Below, in pieces: positions 1,905 to 12,425 of a stretch of DNA of 64,000 bases (position 1 is its first letter; each line of letters opens with the position of its first letter). The position numbers were made by a program, and so were the translations under genes. The DNA comes from Ramazzottius varieornatus (Eukaryota; Animalia; Tardigrada), in NCBI GenBank assembly GCA_001949185.1, contig BDGG01000002.1, forward strand, positions 8,789,990-8,853,989. Reading direction: 5' to 3'. The notes beneath the pieces were generated by a model. That model worked only from the letters and a program-made list of their open reading frames with translations. It was not told the origin of the DNA and did not search any database.

Positions 1905-1981
1905 AGTTGTCGGACAGNNNNNNNNNNNNNNNNNNNNNNNNNNNNNNNNNNNNNNNNNNNNNNNNNNCCTGTCCGACAACT
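1905..1981. repeat. 50-N assembly gap (1918-1967) flanked by a 13-bp inverted repeat
   Basis: AGTTGTCGGACAG immediately left of the Ns; CTGTCCGACAACT (its reverse complement) 1 nt right of them. Confidence 0.75.
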
Positions 1982-3120: not shown

Positions 3121-3322
3121 CAGAGGCATTAGTGATCAGCCGCATAGACTGAAGAGCAATGCTCTGGCCTCCAGCTACTATATCACCACCAGCAAAATCA
3201 GCTAAAGGTGAGCGCGCTGCAGGAGACTACCGTATAAAAGCCATCGCTCATTCTACCATAGACCTTCGCAAAACCATTTTCTTTCTGCTCGTCCACTGCT
3301 CATCATCCGCCCATCTTTCGAC

Positions 3323-4534
3323 ATGGAACGCGCTTTGGCCTTGTGTATTCTGCTGGGAGTAGCCGGCATCGTTAGCGCGGGCTACGGCAACACGGGCAAC
3401 TACGGCAGCAGCGGAAACATGGGCAACAACGGCAACGGCGGAAACAAGGGCAACACCAGTAGCAACTGTCAAGCCAAGCAGTACGCAGTGGAAGGCATGG
3501 TGGTGAGTGGAACCCTGGTGTTACATGGTTCGGGAACTCCGTGTGTCGAGCGAAAGTTTGACATGATTTCTTATGCTTGGTTCTGTTGTTTTCTAGTCGA
3601 AGCTGTTCTTAAATGCGGCTGATGCCAATGGAAAAAACAGCGGCTTCATCATCGACTTTCTGGAGCTGATGAAGGGCGCGTCCGGCGGATGGTTCGACTA
3701 CAATCTGACGGCACGAACAGACGACAACTACGGTGCTCTCGTTACCGATCTCCAGAACAAGGTAGGTTGGCGTCTGGTATACATTTCGATCTGGGGAATC
3801 AGCTACAGTATTTACAGCTGAGTTGATTTCGCTCTTTTTCCTCGTAGAAATTCGACATTGTGGCTGCCGATTTCACTGTCCGATCCGAGCGTCACGCCGT
3901 CATCGACTATTTGCAACCGTTTTTGCGTAGTCAGATTCGCATTCTAGTCAACAACAACCCCAGCGGATCGCCGACTGCCGAGGATGGAGTCGTTGGGGAC
4001 CACCCGACTTGGTACATTGAGGACGACGTCAGCGTTGTCAGCCTCCTGCAGGTATCCCTTCAGGTCCTTCTTCACGCCTGTTTTTTAAGCATCAATGTAA
4101 GGCGGAGTATGTCTTGTTGCAGATTAGCCCCAATGCCACCTTGAACGACATCTACAAGCAAGCCAAGGCCAACAACCGTATCGTCGATCGAGCCACCGGT
4201 GTCGCTGCCATTGTGGCCGCCAACTCGCCCACTGCATTCATCGCCACCAGCCCCGGTATCGTCATCTCCAATGCTAACAATCCCAACACCGCACGCAACA
4301 GCTTGACCCCAGACATCCTGGAAACCGCCTACTTCGCTTTCGCACTCCAGCAAAGTAAGCAACCAACTGTACTGTTTTTCTTGGATTTAGCGCATTCAGT
4401 AGTGATGGTGGGAGTTGACCATTCCTTTTCTTACAGACCAAAACCCCCTCCGTCTGTGCCTGAACATCTTGCAGTTGACAGTCCAGGAAACCGGACAATT
4501 GCAAACTCTGCGAAACCAGTATAATCTGAACTGA
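3323..4534 (+). CDS. Secreted stand-alone ionotropic-glutamate-receptor-type ligand-binding domain (type II periplasmic-binding fold), 292 aa, no TM channel
   Basis: Exons 3323-3502, 3597-3761, 3848-4051, 4123-4354, 4437-4534 with GT-AG introns and a continuous frame (879 nt). Signal peptide MERALALCILLGVAGIVSA; G/N-rich linker; S1-like motifs GFIIDFLELM..FDYNL..YGALVTDLQNKKFDIVAADFTVRSERHAVIDYLQPFL..IRILV; S2-like end YFAFALQQNQNPLRLCLNILQLTVQETGQLQTLRNQY*. Confidence 0.85.
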
Positions 4535-5693
4535 CTTCTGCGTTAACTGAAGTTGTATATGTATGGATTGTGCAGCCAACCTTAACTTTCTCTACCTGTT
4601 GCGATATCAATTGCTCGCGTATGATGCTGTTTTTTAGCTTTCTCCCTGCATTTTGTTCTTGACCGAGGTCTCCCTTGAGTTCAGCGTGATACAAGGGACG
4701 CCAGTATAAACAGTTAATCATTTTGGTTCAACCGAAGAGTAGATCACTGACGCATTGTTGGTCCCCTTCCTTCCGCACATATTGACCAGCCGATGAAGAG
4801 AGTCCAATGCCTAATAATAGAGTGTGCAGCTTTGAACTGGCAAAAAACCATTCAATTTTTTAAGAAAGACCTCTAGCCGTCTTCCGAAGGAGCAATGCAC
4901 ACTCATTGTCCGACCTAAGAAGTTTCACTAGCTGAATCTAGCTAGTTGATTTATGCGTAATTATAAGTAGCAGACAAGCAGTCAGCTGCTTCAACTTATC
5001 TTGTGGGTACAATGTGGGATCAAATACTTGGTCGAATACGAGTATTGTCTGCCCGCCTGTACGGCAGAGTACCCCAGTGTGTCCAGCACAATGCTTTGAG
5101 CGGGAAACATTGTCATGGTAGTGTCGACGTTGACGTTGTTTCTGATTCAGTTGATTTCCAACGTATGTAAGATTATGAAGCGTTTGGTGTACAATCCCAA
5201 CTAGAAGTAAATAAGTGTAGTTCGTAGACATCAAAAATTAGAAGGTACCTTGTCACTTTAGCCGCATTTCAATCTTGAACCGTTGTGCAGTGTGGAGCAG
5301 AGCCTTTCTCGCGGATATAAAATTATGGAAGGTTTACAGAGTTGTTTGCCGGCGTACTATACCCGAGCAAGTACTCTTGCAATTGTTTCAATGCTTCTAG
5401 TTTCAGCTTGCCGTGTCAACAAAGGGGAAGCAATGCCGAACCGCGTAAGTGAAGCCTTTACACGGATCGCTGAGACTCCCACAGTCTCACCTGGGTTCTT
5501 TAGATTGCTGTACATACCCCTATATATGCTGTCGCAGTTTTCAATACCCGCTGTGCGCTCGTAGTGTGATGGAAAGCTCCACCTGCCGCCAAATTAAGGC
5601 TGAAGTTGTTGAAAACCGACCCGGACGCCCAGTTGGCGCATTGGGTTGAGTCTGCTGATTGTGCAAGTTGCGCCAGAGTTCTCAGTCGGAGTA

Positions 5694-5890
5694 CACGCAC
5701 GATGAGAAATTATGGGCCAGTACAAATTATGGGACCAGGCGGAAAAGACGGCAGAATGGAAATTCAAACGTGGAAAAGTGTCGAACAGTTTATGCCGTCA
5801 ACCAATCGCGTACCTACGTGCCTGCGTACTGCCATAGCGAAAAGCCCTGGTCCCTAATTTGTACTGGCCTATGATTTCGCGTCGGGCGTG
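5694..5890. mobile_element. MITE family A (TA target duplication, Tc1/mariner-type), full copy
   Basis: TA|CACGCACGATGAGAAATTATGGGCCAGTACAAATTATGGGACCAGG...CCTGGTCCCTAATTTGTACTGGCCTATGATTTCGCGTCGGGCGTG|TA; homologous copies elsewhere in the window. Confidence 0.8.
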
Positions 5891-8800
5891 TACTCCATCT
5901 TGAATCTTCTGCGATGCTCGAAGGCCAGTGTACACAAGAAGGAGGACGTCTTTATAACTCCTGATTTAATGATATGTCCGCACGTAAAGACCCACCCCAG
6001 GCCGATCCGCTTAGTAGCGGAGGAGCAAGTTACCAACCAGCCGGCCCATACAACGCGAGCAACTGCGCGGAGAATCGGCTGTAGTACCATGGATAGTGTT
6101 ACAACAGTTGGAAGAACGGACGAAACAGGCGGAAAAAGGAAGAGGCAGAAAGCGGGCATTGAGCTAGATCAATCGATGGCGCAATGTACACAGATACACA
6201 CAGGGCGGATAAACTGTTCCGCTGCATGTTGGCCGATCATTGATGGCGACAGTTGCCGTACAAAGCCTGACACATTCCCTCTGTCACGGCCTTTTTTCCC
6301 CTTAAACAGCTCCCTTTTCACAGTCACTGCTCATCCCTTCGACCTTTTGCTTTATCAAACGCAGCTTGTCACTGCATGTAGGACTGTAGGACAGTACTAG
6401 GCCGCAGTACCATGCAAGTGCAGCTTACCAGCTTGTCTCGGGCCTATATGGGGATTAATCGATGGGCGACACCTGCTCCGATCATATGACGCATTGGAGA
6501 TTATGGTCTGATTAGTATGTGCAACCTATGACGTGCTTCCTGCACGGGGAACAATCCACCTTTTCCGAAAGACCCAGCAGCCATAAACGTTAGCTCCCTA
6601 TGGTGCGCTGAGATTGATTTATTGTATGGGGTAAAAGCGAAGGGAAGATATGGCCGTTTCACACACAGACATCGAAGAATAGATTTGTGGAAATACACTG
6701 CGTTCCGTCAAGTTGAGTATGAGATATATCGATGAGGATGGCGTAAAGGAGGAATAAGGAGAATGGAGGGAAAATAGGGCATGTTGGTTGGAGGAGACCA
6801 TCGTAGCGATGGCTTGTTGTTTCAAGTGGTGATTTATTTTTGGATGTTTAAGAATTGAACGGCACTCAGTAGCTAGGGTTTGTTATATTGCTTAGAGGAG
6901 CCATGCAGCTGCTAAACATGGTAGAAGCAGTGTACTCTTCAGACTTTAGTAGGCAGTCATGACAGGCTGTGTGATTGCGTCTGAAGCGCGGGGGAGTTCG
7001 ACGATGGCCAGTCCCCTCAGCTGCTGCACTGTTGCCACACTATCCCATCTCCTTCTGCCTCATCTTCTCCCATCAGCGCGCGTTACGACATACGGCGCAC
7101 TGAACAGTTCACTGCTCACTTGCCAATCACTTCAACAGCCAACGATTAACTGTTGGTAATACTGCTAACAGCTTTTTGCTCCTTCCGCCAGCGACTTATT
7201 TCTTTCGTCTGGGCATCATCTTCCACCGAATTTCGCGCTACATTTATCGCATCGTTTGCGTGTGGACATACTGATATCATTAATATCATAGCCGAATCGT
7301 CTTGACGACCTAGTGTTGGTGGCTGGATTTATTCAAAGGAATACCCGGAAATAAGGGATAACATTACTGTGGCCAAGCTTGATGAGGTACGTAAAGACGA
7401 TGTGCGCATGCAGAAATCGACCAAATGCGATGGTGTGGAGGGTCGCTTCTACGTAGGTAAGATCGATCGGCGACTGAAGAATAGCATTGACTTTCCGACA
7501 AGTTCGCGATGACGACATCGAAACGTCTTGTAATCGATCAGGCTGGCTCTGTTACAGTTTAGTGCCCTTTTGAAGAACATTTCCAAAGTCCGTCCAATAG
7601 ACAGCTTTTAATGGAAAGTGGCTTGCTCCAAAAACCTTGCCTACGTATACAGTAGTGTGCTCACTTGCACAAGGGCAGTTGCGCATAGCCATGCACCCGA
7701 CAAGTGACCAATCAAGGACCTCTTCCTCTGTCAGGTAGGGGAAGGAGAGGAGTCTACAAAGAAAGCGCTAACATTCAGAGAAGGGCTGTAGGCCTTTTTA
7801 GATCGTGACATTTCGGCCCAATTTTCCAGCGGGCCGACTTGGACATTTGGTTGGCTGCGGTGATATCAGTGGCAAAATTAAAGGCTATTCCCTGGCCGAT
7901 AGCCTTCCTGTCAAGCAGATTCAATATCGTTCCGCTCGATAAAGAGCCTGCTGGCATGGCTACAGGCAGATACAGAAGGAAGCGCTCCACTTTCCGGGCT
8001 GCAGATGATCTCTCTCCAACACTGGCCCTCCTTTTTCTGGTTCTATTTTTTCTGCTCACTTCCTCGTTGCTCAAGCAGGGCCAAGCGGACAAGACAAGCC
8101 TGCGGAATGTCTTGGCAGCCATTTCTGAAAGGTTCAAAATAGGCAACATTGGTGTTAAGTTTCATTTGTGCTGGATATGCTGTGTGAAACCTTAGTAAGG
8201 CGTTTAACGAGCAGTCAAAATTCCGAACGACTTGACTGAAATGAAATCCGCCGGTGGACAACGCCGAGGCAGCCATTACAGCCACAGCTGGCATTCTTTT
8301 AATGATGGCGCAACGAACCGCTAACGGTTACGACAAGCTAAAGAGCGAAAAGCCAAACTGCAACTTGATGTCATCATTAATAACGGGTAGCAAATGGCGA
8401 GGATTACGCCAAATATCTGACAATGGACTCCCGGCCGAAATGATCCCTTTGCTCTGATGGTCAAGCTCTCCTTCCAAATGTCCGCCTTGTAAGAGATCAG
8501 GAACGAATCAAGTACTCAGACATCGGTTTCCTGCCTGTGTGTGATCGTTGGGTACCGTATTTGATTGGTTGATTTGTGGCCAGAAAGTAGAGGGGAAGAA
8601 AAGGACGGTTACCAGCGTCTGCCAGCTTGGAGTTGGGAGGAAAACCAAATAGGGGGTGGTAGTTGATGAGTTTTCGGGGAACAGTCTTCATGTGTGGCTG
8701 AGCTGGCAAATGCAGCTTGAAATTAAATCACGGGCTTTGGCCGTGTATGTTTGATCTATGGGGTGTGTCCTTTGAGCAGCGTCATACATCGTCAAAAATG

Positions 8801-9801
8801 CGCAACGTTGCAGCTAGCTCTCCAGTGCCCCCCCCCCCTCTGCCTTGTCTCAATGGCCGCATCTTTACATTTTGTAGGACATGTCATAACTGCTCATCAA
8901 GCCTTTAATCGTTCAGCCGCCATATTTACCCACACAAGCCAGTCGATATATGATTAAAAATACCCCCTGTCCCATTCCATTTGATCGCCGATCGTCACTC
9001 TGCCATGTCGACCGAGATTTTATACCCTGCAGTCTGGCCAACCAGCGCGCCTTCCCATCACATTACTAATCTCCCTCCGCTACATTATTCATCGAAGCCA
9101 TATTATAAACTTACGATTAAAGCATTTGCAGGCTGCTGAATCGATGAGCAAGGAATATATGTAAAGCATACAGACACTGTAGATTCAGCCGAGAAAAGCG
9201 TTTTCTCCCCCAGCCAAACATTGGCAAAAGGGGGCAGAAGCTGGCAGCGCGGGCCAGCTATAGCATTGGGTCTCAAGTAAACCGTGAAGGACAGGCAGGA
9301 TGGCGCTGGATGAGGAGGACGTTTAACGTTGGACCATAGACTGTAAAGAGGCTTCTTTAGACCATTGATGAACTGTAAGACTGTAACCAGCGACATTTTA
9401 CATCATGTTAATGGATTAACTTTCCTCCTTCAAGCCCTTCCAACGGCAGCACTTCACATGCATTACGGTTGGCACTTGCCCGCACTTTTCTTTCTTCCAT
9501 GGAAGTCATTCTTGGCTTTATATTCTCTTGCAGAAGCATCATGAGCAAGTGGTTGGAAGCTTGGCGGATAGTTGAACTGTGTCATGGGTGGCTGGTGTGG
9601 TGCCCTTCACCGCAGTGACGTTACCCAGTGAGTACTGCCGTGAATGTCAGAGTGGCCAGCTCCGTGGCTTCTTGGGGACTTTGCTGCTGGAGGTTCGCGC
9701 CGCCACTTCCCGGATGTCGACTGTTAAATTGCCTCTGACGACGACGACGAAGCCGAAGCCAAAACGCAAGACCACCTTGAAGGAAGGGCCACTTCCTCGT
9801 T

Positions 9802-12425
9802 ATGTTGATGGATTGCAGCTGCCTTCGTCTACAGTCGGGTCTTGCCTTCCTCCTTGCCTCCTGTCTTACCTTGTGCCTCATTGACCACAGTAAGATTGAT
9901 CCATGGGACATGCGGCATATGGGGTTTGATGGACGTTGACTGTCTTGCAGGCTGTGGCTCGGATGACGAAGAACGTTTGGTCAAAGATTTGTTTGCCCGC
10001 TATAACCGCTTGATCCGTCCAGTGCGCCATATGAATGAAACTGTCAAAGTGGAGTTCACATTGATCTTGTCATTGCTCATTAACGTGGTAAGTCACTCCA
10101 CTTTTCCGACCTTCTCTTTCCCAGTCATTTCCTCCTCCTTTCCTCTCCTCCATCCCACAAAGTGCCCTTGATCACCCCATCATTTCCCTTCTCTATCTAT
10201 CATTCGCAGCAAGAAAAGGAACAAGTTATGAAGACCAACGTCTGGCTCCAGTTCGTAAGTAACCCACTTCAAACCATTTTCTGCTTCGTTGACACAAATA
10301 TGTCTTGATACGGAAGTCGCCACCAAATTAATCTATCAACAAATGACAAGAAATTCTTTCCAGAAAACAAAACTTTTTGCAGAAAAATCCCTGCAGAAAA
10401 ATGAATCCCGCTGCAGTTAATAGGTGAATGATACGTTTGTTCACCGCGGTGACGTCATTGTGGAAATCGATGTAAATGTTTCGGGTCTATTTTTGGCCAG
10501 ATCTTGCCGGCATCTATCTAATAGTAACTATCAGTAGGCAGATTGGATAGTGGTATTGTGACAGTTGGTTGCCATTGTGGTTTTTCTGCAGAAGTGGATA
10601 GATCCGCAGATGACATGGGAGCCGGCCAACTACGGGGGCATCCAATCGATCCGCCTGCCGGTGGACAAGATATGGACACCCGACGTTGTTCTCATCAATA
10701 AGTGCGTAAAGTAGCCCCTAAGCTGCCTGCTAAACGCCACTTTACCAAATCCCCGTCCTTCTGCCTTGGCACTTGGAAGGGGCTGCTGTTACAGCTTGTG
10801 CTCAAATCTTCGATGCACGCGCTCTTCAGCCTCTTCTCCAGCCTCGTTAAACAAATGAAACCTGGGCATTTCCATCAAGACGACCGCGTCTTTCTTTTTT
10901 GCAGTGCTGATGGCAAATACACCGAGAGCTTCAAATCAAACATCGTTGTCCAATCCACCGGCGACCTCCTCTGGCTGCCGCCTTCCATTTACAAATCAAC
11001 CTGTGATATTAAAGTGCAAAACTTTCCGTTCGATGTAAGCCTACTCATCATCTACTTGGTCCTTCCGCGGAAAAAAACAACATTGGTTTTTTCCATTGGA
11101 GAAATTCTTTAAAATAAAAAAAGAAGTCCCTGAAGAAAGTTTGGCCCAGAACAGACAGTGATGTGGGATGTTGTTGTAGGAACAAATATGCGATATGAAG
11201 TTTCAATCGTGGACGTACAACGCCGACGAAGTGATGCTAGAGTTCCCGGCCGGCATGGCCAACGAGATTGAAATGTCCAACTACCAGCCTTCGGGGACAT
11301 GGGACGTGGTCAAAGCGCCGGGCTTCCGCAATGTCTACCGCAAGAGTCCGGCCGAGGCGCGCCAAGCCGACATCACCTACAAGATTATCATTCGGCGCAA
11401 GACGCTTTTTTACACCATCAACCTGCTGATCCCCACCGTGCTGGTTAGCTTCCTGTCGGTGTTGGTCTTTTACTTGCCGACCATTGCCGGCGAGAAGGTG
11501 GCCCTGTCCATCTCCATCTTGCTCACCCTCAACGTCTTCCTACTACTGGTCTCCAAGCTGCTACCCCCCGCTTCCGACTTACCCCTCATCGGCAAGTTCC
11601 TCCTCTTTACGTTCCTAATGAACCTCGTCTCCATCATCATCACCGTCGTCACCATCAACCTCAACTTTCGCTCGCCCAAGACTCATACTATGCCGTCATG
11701 GATCAAGAAGGTCTTTCTGGACTGCCTACCCGTCGTCCTACTGATGCGACGACCCAAGAAGCCCAAGCGCCACAACCCTTATGCAGCCCAACAATCGCGC
11801 CTGGCTGCCAACCATCGGCCAACCACAACCGCCTTTAATCCCTCATCGGCAGCGCCTCTCTCCGATGGCTACCGCGAGGCCCATGAAATGGTGGAGTTTC
11901 GGGCCAACGACGCCCGCAACAGAGCGATGCCCGTCCCCTCCTCCACCACCACTTCGGCCAACCTGGGACATTCCAGGGCCTTTGGACGGCAAGTCTATTC
12001 CGACACCCCTCCGCCAGAAGCATCCTTTCAGCCCTCACAGCGCTACAACGGCCAGCCTCCGTTGGATGAATGCGAGGAGTGGCTGCTAAAGTCACCCGAC
12101 GTTAGATTGGTGACCAATTCCATCGAGTGTATCGTTCAGTATCACCAACAGAATGACGCCATACAGGAGGTTAGTGCCAGTACTGCCTTGCTTCGACAGC
12201 TCTTGGCCAGTATTGTCGTTATCAGCGTGGTAGGATGGAGATAAGTGGTTATCCTCTGTGTTGTTGCAGGTGGAAGATGATTGGAAATACGTGGCCTTGG
12301 TTGTCGATCGCCTCTTATTGTGGATATTTTTTATAGCGACAACAGCTGGCTCCTTCAAGATTTTGCTCAGTGCCGACACCATATTTGAAAGTCTGGAAGA
12401 GGCCAAAAATAGGAAATACTTTTAA
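9802..12425 (+). CDS. Nicotinic acetylcholine receptor non-alpha subunit (arthropod beta1-like)
   Basis: Exons 9802-9889, 9951-10087, 10210-10254, 10592-10701, 10905-11034, 11180-12169, 12270-12425. Signal peptide; SDDEERLVKDLFARYNRLIRPV; WTPDVVL; Cys-loop CDIKVQNFPFDEQIC; no vicinal Cys in loop C; RRKTLFY-M1; GEK-M2; M4 preceded by DDWKYVALVVDRL. Confidence 0.95.

What the first reader, a model, noticed from the sequence alone, without database searches (positions are those of the whole stretch)
3323..4534. Secreted, channel-less iGluR ligand-binding protein: candidate soluble amino-acid/glutamate-binding protein
Seen: five canonically spliced exons give an intact 292-aa ORF with a signal peptide, a short G/N-rich linker, and S1-like sequence running directly into S2-like sequence before a stop. 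There is no amino-terminal domain, no M1-P-M3, no M4 and no hydrophobic GPI tail. The alpha-amino-acid anchor motif is kept (ADFTVRSER; iGluR APLTITxxR with the carboxylate-binding Arg). The six-frame ORF track breaks the gene into unrecognisable pieces. Known: animal iGluRs and IRs always have the channel inserted between S1 and S2; S1S2-only architecture is that of bacterial amino-acid periplasmic binding proteins and of engineered S1S2 constructs; molluscan AChBP is the precedent for a secreted receptor ligand-binding domain. Inference: a natural S1S2 protein acting as an extracellular transmitter buffer, carrier or chemosensory binding protein, the iGluR counterpart of AChBP. I do not know of a described animal family like this but cannot search to confirm novelty.
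Basis: partly seen in the sequence, partly recalled or inferred. Interest (0 to 1): 0.88.

Follow-up and report, generated by a model that had tools for sequence, protein, structure and literature searches.

The report
Secreted channel-less glutamate-receptor binding domain
A tardigrade gene encodes only the ligand-binding clamshell of an ionotropic glutamate receptor, with a signal peptide and no ion channel, and it descends from a real receptor gene; whether it still works is untested.

Summary
Five GT-AG exons (3323-3502, 3597-3761, 3848-4051, 4123-4354, 4437-4534, + strand) give a 292-aa ORF. It is identical to GenBank GAU94614.1 (RvY_06352, Ramazzottius varieornatus, "hypothetical protein").

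The protein has a signal peptide, a G/N-rich tail and S1 fused directly to S2 inside exon 3. It stops three residues after the last S2 helix. There is no transmembrane segment, and no Lig_chan match lies within 200 kb.

The predicted fold is a type II PBP / iGluR ligand-binding domain (Z about 22 to GluK, GluA and GluRIIB LBDs and to GlnBP).

It descends from an animal iGluR, not from a bacterial binding protein. All four introns match, in position and phase, introns of real iGluR genes in the same genome. Paralog copies keep the iGluR-specific loop.

It is one of five channel-less loci. Three are clear pseudogenes and one has a non-GT splice donor. Pairwise dN/dS of about 0.14-0.23 shows the channel-less protein was long under selection.

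The carboxylate-binding Arg130 is kept. The acidic alpha-amino anchor is Thr225 here, but Glu in two dead copies.

Expression could not be checked and no orthologue was found. The function as a ligand binder is inferred.

The parts
3233..3238 (+). TATAAA box, 90 nt upstream of the ATG (candidate core promoter)
   Evidence: Motif scan; its function is inferred only.
3323..3502 (+). Exon 1. Signal peptide at residues 1-19 (3323-3379). G/N-rich low-complexity tail at residues 20-48. Cys49 (3467-3469). First S1 strand KQYAVEGMV.
   Evidence: donor GTGAGT. The same exon plan is seen in paralogs L010, L009 and L163.
3597..3761 (+). Exon 2: S1 core (GFIIDFLE..GGWFDYNLT). The iGluR loop is shortened by 8 residues compared with the paralogs.
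   Evidence: Pfam Lig_chan-Glu_bd positions 23-62. The acceptor position is shared with iGluR genes L005 and L007.
3848..4051 (+). Exon 3: end of S1 with the ligand-binding Thr125 and Arg130 (3890-3892). The S1-S2 junction is at residues 151-161 (3953-3985), where the channel would sit. Then the start of S2.
   Evidence: Pfam Lig_chan-Glu_bd positions 79-113. Arg130 is invariant in alignment A2. The acceptor is shared with iGluR genes L006 and L007, and the donor with L012.
4123..4354 (+). Exon 4: S2 lobe. Thr225 (4246-4248) sits at the position of the alpha-amino-binding Asp/Glu.
   Evidence: The phase-1 donor A|GTAAGC is at the same position as in iGluR gene L012.
4437..4534 (+). Exon 5: last S2 helices (LRLCLNILQLTVQETGQLQTLRNQY), Cys268 (4457-4459) and the stop at 4532-4534, which comes before any M4.
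   Evidence: In iGluR gene L012 the same exon runs on into M4.
4705..4710 (+). TATAAA, 171 nt after the stop. It is the only poly(A)-signal-like hexamer nearby and is a weak candidate.
   Evidence: not tested.

Best explanation
RvY_06352 is a lineage-specific derivative of an animal ionotropic glutamate receptor that has lost every part except the ligand-binding clamshell.

How it arose: an in-frame deletion fused the 5' part of the exon holding the S1 end and M1 to the 3' part of the exon holding M3 and the S2 start. This removed M1-P-M3. A stop codon now ends the protein three residues after the last S2 helix, before M4. Exon 1 supplies a signal peptide and a disordered G/N-rich tail in place of an amino-terminal domain.

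The product is a roughly 29-kDa secreted type II PBP clamshell (mature pI about 5.2, three N-glycosylation sequons). It has exactly two cysteines, C49 and C268, which probably staple the N- and C-termini of lobe 1 together.

Shown: the architecture, the fold, the iGluR descent, and past purifying selection on the channel-less form.

Inferred: that it is secreted; that it still closes on a small carboxylate-bearing ligand through Arg130 and Thr125; and that, having no pore, it acts as an extracellular binding protein (buffer, scavenger, carrier or perireceptor protein). Thr225 replaces the acidic alpha-amino anchor, so the ligand need not be an alpha-amino acid.
For: Gene model and identity.

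No channel:
- S1 and S2 are contiguous in one exon.
- The genome-wide PF00060 scan has no hit in the window or near any paralog; the nearest is 210 kb away.
- tblastx of four iGluR loci against the 64-kb window matches only exon 3.

Fold:
- AF2 with a 37-row alignment gives pLDDT 71, pTM 0.70.
- Foldseek best TMq is 0.65-0.66, rmsd 3.6 A, to the Drosophila GluR1A, KaiR1D and GluRIIB LBDs.
- VIA Z is about 22, rmsd 2.3-2.8 A over 220-230 residues.
- The ESM Atlas model has pTM 0.67.

iGluR descent:
- All four introns coincide in position and phase with introns of real iGluR genes in the same genome.
- Exon 2 of paralog L010 hits only animal iGluRs in the PDB, through the YG..(W)NG(M/L)I loop, and only Lig_chan-Glu_bd in Pfam.

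Past function:
- All five loci share the channel-less plan.
- Pairwise dN/dS is 0.14-0.23 with dS of at least 1.4.
- The lesions in the dead copies are independent of one another.

Binding site: Arg130 is invariant.

Cysteines: C49 and C268 co-vary. Both are present in the window gene and L010, and both are absent in L011 and L163.
Against:
- Three of the four paralogs are clearly dead and the fourth has a non-GT donor, so the family looks dispensable in this lineage.
- The window copy is not more conserved than the dead ones. It has 6 lineage-specific substitutions in 111 columns, against 2 and 8 for two of the pseudogenes.
- It also carries an 8-residue deletion in loop 1, an 8-residue net insertion at the S1-S2 junction, and Glu->Thr at the alpha-amino anchor.
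- No orthologue or other relative was found among 5.8 billion or 1.84 billion proteins, in prokaryotic genomes, or in metagenomes.
- Lobe 2 of the model is of modest confidence (pLDDT 50-70; residues 168-185 are below 50).
- The S654/T655 equivalents cannot be mapped unambiguously. The iGluR-style and SBP-style alignments differ by 11 residues there.
Confidence: 0.6

Rival explanations
1. It is a relic. The gene is the last still-open copy of a decaying family. It is no longer expressed or needed, and its ORF is intact only because too little time has passed.
For: Three paralogs carry frameshifts, stops or lost splice sites, and a fourth has a non-GT donor. The window copy has as many private substitutions as the pseudogenes, two 8-residue indels, and has lost the acidic anchor residue that two dead copies keep. 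No orthologue was found anywhere.
Against: All five exons are open and all eight splice sites are canonical. There is a TATA box and a good start context. Each dead copy has at least three lesions. The gene was called by the genome's annotation, in which RNA-seq-based models were merged with ab initio models. None of the paralogs appears in the protein databases.
Confidence: 0.25
2. It is functional, but not as a small-molecule binder. A soluble LBD could pair with the LBD layer of membrane iGluRs or IRs as a decoy or auxiliary subunit. Alternatively, it could be a matrix or cuticle-associated protein anchored by its G/N-rich tail.
For: From general knowledge, iGluR LBDs dimerise back-to-back through lobe 1. 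The alpha-amino anchor is lost. The N-terminal low-complexity tail is longest in this copy.
Against: Arg130 and Thr125 of the ligand pocket are conserved. No interaction was tested.
Confidence: 0.1
3. It is a mis-modelled fragment of a full-length iGluR or IR, whose channel exons lie elsewhere or are alternatively spliced.
For: Gene models in compact genomes are sometimes split. About 5.3 kb of unannotated DNA follows the stop.
Against: The S1-S2 junction lies inside a single exon. There is an in-frame stop after the last helix. No Lig_chan or other iGluR similarity exists anywhere else in the 64-kb window. The same architecture and stop position recur at the paralogous loci. The next gene downstream is an unrelated Cys-loop receptor.
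Confidence: 0.03
4. It is a bacterial periplasmic amino-acid-binding protein acquired by horizontal transfer and later given introns and a eukaryotic signal peptide.
For: Pfam SBP_bac_3 scores slightly higher than Lig_chan-Glu_bd. In pairwise phmmer, some prokaryotic SBPs reach 32-35 bits, against 23 bits for the tardigrade's own iGluR S1 exon.
Against: All four intron positions and phases match iGluR genes of the same genome. The paralogs keep the iGluR-only loop and the (D/E)xP(Y/F) start of S1. No close prokaryotic relative was found. The higher SBP scores arise because this copy lost the iGluR loop and so aligns without a gap. The SBP set was also pre-selected by a motif from that same region.
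Confidence: 0.02

Closest known systems
Engineered iGluR S1S2 ligand-binding cores (e.g. GluA2 S1S2J; Drosophila GluR1A and KaiR1D LBD constructs, PDB 5ict, 5dt6, 5dtb)
   Same: Same fold. S1 is cut just after its last strand (..RILVNN here..IMIKK in GluA2) and joined to the start of S2, and the protein ends just after the KW-helix. These constructs are the best sequence matches in the PDB (E about 1e-5) and the best structural matches (TMq 0.65-0.66; Z about 22).
   Different: This protein is natural and genomically encoded. It has a signal peptide and a G/N-rich N-terminal tail. It lacks the conserved S2 disulfide and has a different Cys pair (C49/C268). Loop 1 is shortened. Thr replaces the E705-type acid.
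Bacterial periplasmic amino-acid-binding proteins (SBP_bac_3: GlnBP, ArgBP, LAOBP)
   Same: A stand-alone soluble type II clamshell of similar size. Pfam PF00497 scores 44.4 bits. The Arg is invariant. Structural scores are tied.
   Different: It is not of bacterial descent: the introns are shared with iGluR genes and the paralogs carry the iGluR loop. There is no ABC-transporter partner or operon. The conserved ligand Asp is replaced by Thr225.
Molluscan and annelid acetylcholine-binding protein (AChBP)
   Same: [quoted passage not shown]
   Different: It belongs to an unrelated superfamily and fold (Cys-loop beta-sandwich pentamer). AChBP function is demonstrated; here nothing has been tested.
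Protostome variant ionotropic receptors (IRs) and vertebrate kainate-binding proteins
   Same: These are iGluR relatives without an amino-terminal domain. Many IRs also lack one of the R/T/(D/E) ligand triad residues.
   Different: IRs and KBPs keep M1-P-M3 and M4 and are membrane proteins. This protein has none of those segments.

Membership tests
Ionotropic glutamate receptor superfamily | S1 ligand-binding signature (Pfam PF10613 above the 30-bit gathering score) | tested here: met
   42.2 bits, E 1e-10, residues 68-151. Exons 2 and 3 hit it collinearly.
Ionotropic glutamate receptor superfamily | Bilobed type II PBP fold of the LBD | tested here: met
   AF2 pLDDT 71, pTM 0.70. Z about 22, rmsd 2.3-2.8 A over 220-230 residues to the GluK, GluA and GluRIIB LBDs.
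Ionotropic glutamate receptor superfamily | Common descent with real iGluR genes (shared gene structure) | tested here: met
   All four introns have the same position and phase as introns in the tardigrade iGluR genes at C2:6.46 Mb, C1:3.41 Mb and C4:3.86 Mb.
Ionotropic glutamate receptor superfamily | Pore-forming M1-P-M3 between S1 and S2 (Pfam PF00060) | tested here: not met
   S1 and S2 are contiguous in exon 3. There is no PF00060 match in the window or within 200 kb and no iGluR TM similarity in the window.
Ionotropic glutamate receptor superfamily | M4 transmembrane helix after S2 | tested here: not met
   The stop comes three residues after the Tyr at the KW-helix Trp position. Maximum hydropathy outside the signal peptide is 1.38. 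In iGluR gene L012 the homologous exon continues into M4.
Ionotropic glutamate receptor superfamily | Amino-acid ligand triad Arg / Thr / Asp-or-Glu (GluA2 R485, T480, E705) | tested here: inconclusive
   Arg130 and Thr125 are present, but the acid is replaced by Thr225. Paralogs L009 and L011 have Glu at that position.
Bacterial SBP_bac_3 periplasmic binding proteins | PF00497 above the 26.4-bit gathering score | tested here: met
   44.4 bits, residues 68-289.
Bacterial SBP_bac_3 periplasmic binding proteins | Prokaryotic descent or context (close bacterial relatives, transporter partner) | tested here: not met
   No relative in 185,579 prokaryotic species genomes by pattern plus tblastn. NCBIfam scores are far below the cut-offs. 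The spliceosomal introns are shared with iGluR genes.
AChBP-like secreted receptor-LBD proteins (functional class) | Secreted, no membrane anchor | tested here: met
   By sequence only: an N-terminal h-region with VSA|G, no other hydrophobic segment, no C-terminal hydrophobic tail, and three N-X-S/T sequons. Secretion was not shown experimentally.
AChBP-like secreted receptor-LBD proteins (functional class) | Binds the transmitter or a small ligand in the extracellular fluid | not testable with these tools
   Needs a recombinant protein and binding assays.

The most novel reading that the evidence does not exclude
RvY_06352 is a functioning natural S1S2 protein: the first known secreted, channel-less iGluR ligand-binding domain in an animal. 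It would be made by the same two cuts that structural biologists use, and would act as an extracellular binding protein for an amino acid or carboxylate, as an iGluR counterpart of AChBP.
Probability: 0.45. Interest if true: 0.8.

Novelty: new variant of a known kind. Interest (0 to 1): 0.6.

Why it matters
iGluR ligand-binding cores have been studied for 30 years as engineered S1S2 constructs. A natural gene with the same boundaries shows that evolution can release this domain as a stand-alone soluble protein, and that it kept it under selection for a long time.

If the surviving copy is active, it would be a naturally soluble, crystallisable iGluR-type binding protein with an altered pocket. 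It could also point to a transmitter- or metabolite-buffering mechanism in tardigrades.

The clean intron evidence also gives a worked example of how to tell receptor-derived binding proteins from horizontally acquired bacterial ones. Raw similarity scores were misleading here.

Tried and rejected
- AF2 on the single sequence failed, with pLDDT 34. An alignment of exon fragments from the paralogs (A1) was too badly aligned to use.
- Full-length and region searches of 5.8 billion proteins returned only the protein itself.
- The exon-3 search of 1.84 billion representatives returned the protein itself plus three repeat-protein artefacts.
- Scans of prokaryotic genomes and metagenomes for relatives gave only chance matches.
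- Pairwise similarity as a test of origin was rejected. Prokaryotic SBPs scored as high as or higher than the tardigrade's own iGluRs.
- A count of private substitutions did not separate the intact copy from the pseudogenes.
- Supplementary tables of the two tardigrade genome papers contain no entry for RvY_06352 in the text held.
- The automated query-anchored alignment of the paralogs was noisy. I replaced it with coordinate-defined blocks.

Full report
**What is there**

The window is part of scaffold C2 of a 55.8-Mb, 200-contig genome. That size matches the published Ramazzottius varieornatus assembly, and the database names of the encoded protein agree.

On the + strand, five exons (3323-3502, 3597-3761, 3848-4051, 4123-4354, 4437-4534) are joined by four GT-AG introns of 94, 86, 71 and 82 nt. 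The introns are in phases 0, 0, 0 and 1. Together the exons give 879 nt, which is 292 codons plus a stop.

The exon-3 search of 1.84 billion representatives returned a 292-aa protein, P0001, with 100% identity to exon 3. Its printed sequence equals the joined model, and from then on I used that id. P0001 is GAU94614.1, "hypothetical protein RvY_06352", UniProt A0A1D1UY86. Inside scripts, the joined translation was built from window.fa and used only for local comparisons with fetched loci.

**Anatomy**

- Residues 1-19 form a signal-peptide-like segment (charged n-region, hydrophobic core, VSA|G).
- Residues 20-48 are a G/N-rich low-complexity tail.
- Cys49 precedes the first S1 strand.
- Pfam on the whole protein gives SBP_bac_3 (44.4 bits, residues 68-289) and Lig_chan-Glu_bd (42.2 bits, residues 68-151). 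Both are above their gathering scores.
- No 19-residue window outside the signal peptide exceeds a Kyte-Doolittle mean of 1.38.
- The mature chain is about 29 kDa with pI 5.2. It has three N-X-S/T sequons and exactly two cysteines, C49 and C268.

**No channel**

The end of S1 (..VIDYLQPFLRSQIRILVNN) and the start of S2 lie in the same exon 3, so M1-P-M3 cannot be spliced in between them. The ORF stops three residues after the Tyr that occupies the position of the KW-helix Trp.

A genome-wide six-frame scan with Pfam Lig_chan (PF00060) found 24 matches. None is in the window or near any paralog, and the nearest is 210 kb away. tblastx of four real iGluR loci against the whole 64-kb window matched only exon 3. 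The next gene downstream, from about 9.8 kb, is an unrelated Cys-loop receptor.

**Fold**

AF2 on the single sequence failed, with pLDDT 34. I then built a 37-row alignment from the protein and 36 prokaryotic SBP ORFs fetched by a motif scan. With it the model reached pLDDT 71.2 and pTM 0.70. Lobe 1 is above 90 and lobe 2 is at 50-70.

Foldseek against the PDB returned at least 500 hits at E of 0.001 or better. They were led by ArgBP and GlnBP and by iGluR LBDs. The highest query-normalised TM scores (0.65-0.66, rmsd 3.6 A, up to 22% identity) were to the Drosophila GluR1A, KaiR1D and GluRIIB LBDs. VIA-align gave Z of about 22 with rmsd 2.3-2.8 A over 220-230 residues for kainate and AMPA-type LBDs, and for GlnBP, within a tie. 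The ESM Atlas's own model (pTM 0.67) has SBP_bac_3 clusters as structural neighbours.

**Origin**

Raw similarity does not settle the origin.
- In the PDB, the best sequence hits are arthropod and rotifer iGluR LBD constructs (28.7-26.6 bits), closely followed by bacterial proteins.
- Against the fetched prokaryotic SBPs, the protein reaches 32-35 bits.
- Against the tardigrade's own iGluR S1 exon, it reaches only 23 bits.

Two other lines of evidence are decisive.

First, the introns. All four are shared with real iGluR genes of the same genome, in position and phase.

| Intron | Phase and position in the window gene | Same intron in iGluR genes |
|---|---|---|
| 1 | Phase 0, immediately before the (S/D/E)xP(F/Y) start of exon 2 | C2:6.46 Mb (..tag\|GAGTCGCCGTAT, ESPYVM) and C4:3.86 Mb (..cag\|GAAGAACCATAC, EEPYMM) |
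| 2 | Phase 0, before K/E-x-D, 15 residues ahead of the ligand Arg | C1:3.41 Mb (ILNG\|KADLAV) and C4:3.86 Mb (LVRK\|EADMVV) |
| 3 | Phase 0, after ..SLLQ | C2:6.46 Mb, after ..KFFE |
| 4 | Phase 1, splitting an Asn codon, donor A\|GTAAGC after YFAFALQQ | C2:6.46 Mb, after GYGVAFPK, with the same donor |

Second, the paralogs. They keep the iGluR-specific loop (..YGNSVNGTNSGLIADL, compare GluD1 ..YGHQLHNTSWNGMIGEL). Exon 2 of paralog L010 hits 46 PDB chains that are animal iGluRs, plus one unrelated hypothetical protein, and no bacterial SBP. In Pfam it hits only Lig_chan-Glu_bd. The window copy has lost eight residues of this loop, which explains why it aligns so smoothly with bacterial proteins.

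Comparison with the C2:6.46-Mb iGluR gene shows how the gene was made. Exon 3 fuses the 5' part of the exon holding the S1 end and M1 with the 3' part of the exon holding M3 and the S2 start. The last exon is truncated by a stop before the stretch that continues into M4 in the receptor gene.

**The family**

Six-frame searches of the genome found four further loci with the same five-exon, channel-less plan.

| Locus | Lesions or state |
|---|---|
| C2:0.96 Mb (-) | Frameshifts in exons 2 and 4; no recognisable exon 5 |
| C2:2.58 Mb (+) | +1 frameshift in exon 2; lost intron-2 donor; frameshifting deletion in exon 4 |
| C13:0.25 Mb (-) | In-frame stops in exons 2 and 5; a degraded exon 4 |
| C2:1.05 Mb (+) | All exons open, but ..TACAGT\|gggatg where the intron-2 donor should be |

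The lesions differ between copies, so the copies died independently. None of these paralogs appears in the protein databases, although their exon 3 would have scored well.

On 113 well-aligned codons, pairwise dN/dS is 0.14-0.23 with dS of 1.4-2.7. dS is saturated and the blocks are conserved ones, so these ratios are rough. Even so, the duplicates are old, and the channel-less protein evolved under purifying selection for most of that time. The pseudogenisations are comparatively recent.

The window copy has no fewer private substitutions than two of the pseudogenes: 6 in 111 columns, against 2 and 8. Its present constraint is therefore not demonstrated.

Cys49 and Cys268 are both present in the window gene and in the 2.58-Mb copy. 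Both are replaced in the C13 copy (by R and F) and in the 1.05-Mb copy (by N and F). This pattern suggests a disulfide that ties the two termini of lobe 1 together. It is weak evidence, because most of these copies are dead or doubtful.

**Binding site**

Arg130 aligns with the invariant ligand Arg in 36/36 SBPs and in the iGluRs. Thr125 aligns with GluA2 T480. Thr225 occupies the position where 33/36 SBPs have Asp and the iGluRs have Glu or Asp (GluA2 E705). The 0.96-Mb and C13 copies have Glu there.

The S654/T655 equivalents are uncertain. The iGluR-style alignment, which is supported by the shared intron 3, gives V176-S177-V178. The SBP-based alignment gives G165-D166-H167. That stretch is of low confidence in the model.

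The pocket therefore keeps the carboxylate clamp but not the alpha-amino clamp, as in many odour-sensing IRs (my own knowledge of the IR literature).

**What could not be done**

- No orthologue was found in 5.8 billion or 1.84 billion proteins, in prokaryotic genomes, or in metagenomes. Other tardigrade genomes are not directly searchable here.
- Literature searches found no description of this gene or of any natural secreted iGluR LBD. Subscription journals are not covered.

**Verdict**

Descent from an animal iGluR by channel deletion is about as firm as sequence analysis can make it. That also answers the scan's companion question, s1-794287.

The proposed role as an extracellular binding protein is plausible but untested. 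It is weakened by the decay of the rest of the family and by the altered pocket.

I class it as a new variant of a known kind. The gene model is already deposited as a hypothetical protein, but I found no description of it as a natural S1S2 protein in the literature searched.

Noticed in passing
window 9842-12244 (+): A Cys-loop ligand-gated channel gene (Pfam Neur_chan_LBD and Neur_chan_memb, E 1e-41) lies about 5.3 kb downstream of the channel-less iGluR-LBD gene, on the same strand. It is a separate gene.
   Followed up: partly
window 4535-9840: About 5.3 kb have no recognisable coding similarity, in a genome whose mean inter-CDS distance is about 1.1 kb. The 170-aa ORF at 5888-6400 has no Pfam hit.
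   Followed up: partly
window 1918-1967: A run of 50 N, an assembly gap or masked stretch, lies 1.35 kb upstream of the gene.
   Followed up: no
G000:C2:1049700-1050900 (+) = L163:5710-6897: The most divergent family member. All five exons are open and it has its own signal peptide. It has no G-rich tail, neither Cys, Asn at the acid-anchor position, and a shorter C-terminus. The intron-2 donor is not GT, so it may be a second live gene using an odd splice, or a fresh pseudogene.
   Followed up: partly
G000:C2:961900-963000 (-), C2:2575300-2578060 (+), C13:246400-247300 (-): Three independently inactivated channel-less paralogs. They preserve ancestral features that the window copy has lost: the full iGluR loop 1 in all three, and Glu at the E705 position in the 0.96-Mb and C13 copies.
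   Followed up: yes
G000:C2:6463300-6464700 (+) = L012: A real AMPA/kainate-like iGluR gene that shares introns 1, 3 and 4 with the window gene. It is the best candidate for the parental type. In it, the S1 end, M1 and part of M2 lie in one exon, and the last S2 helix and M4 lie in another.
   Followed up: partly
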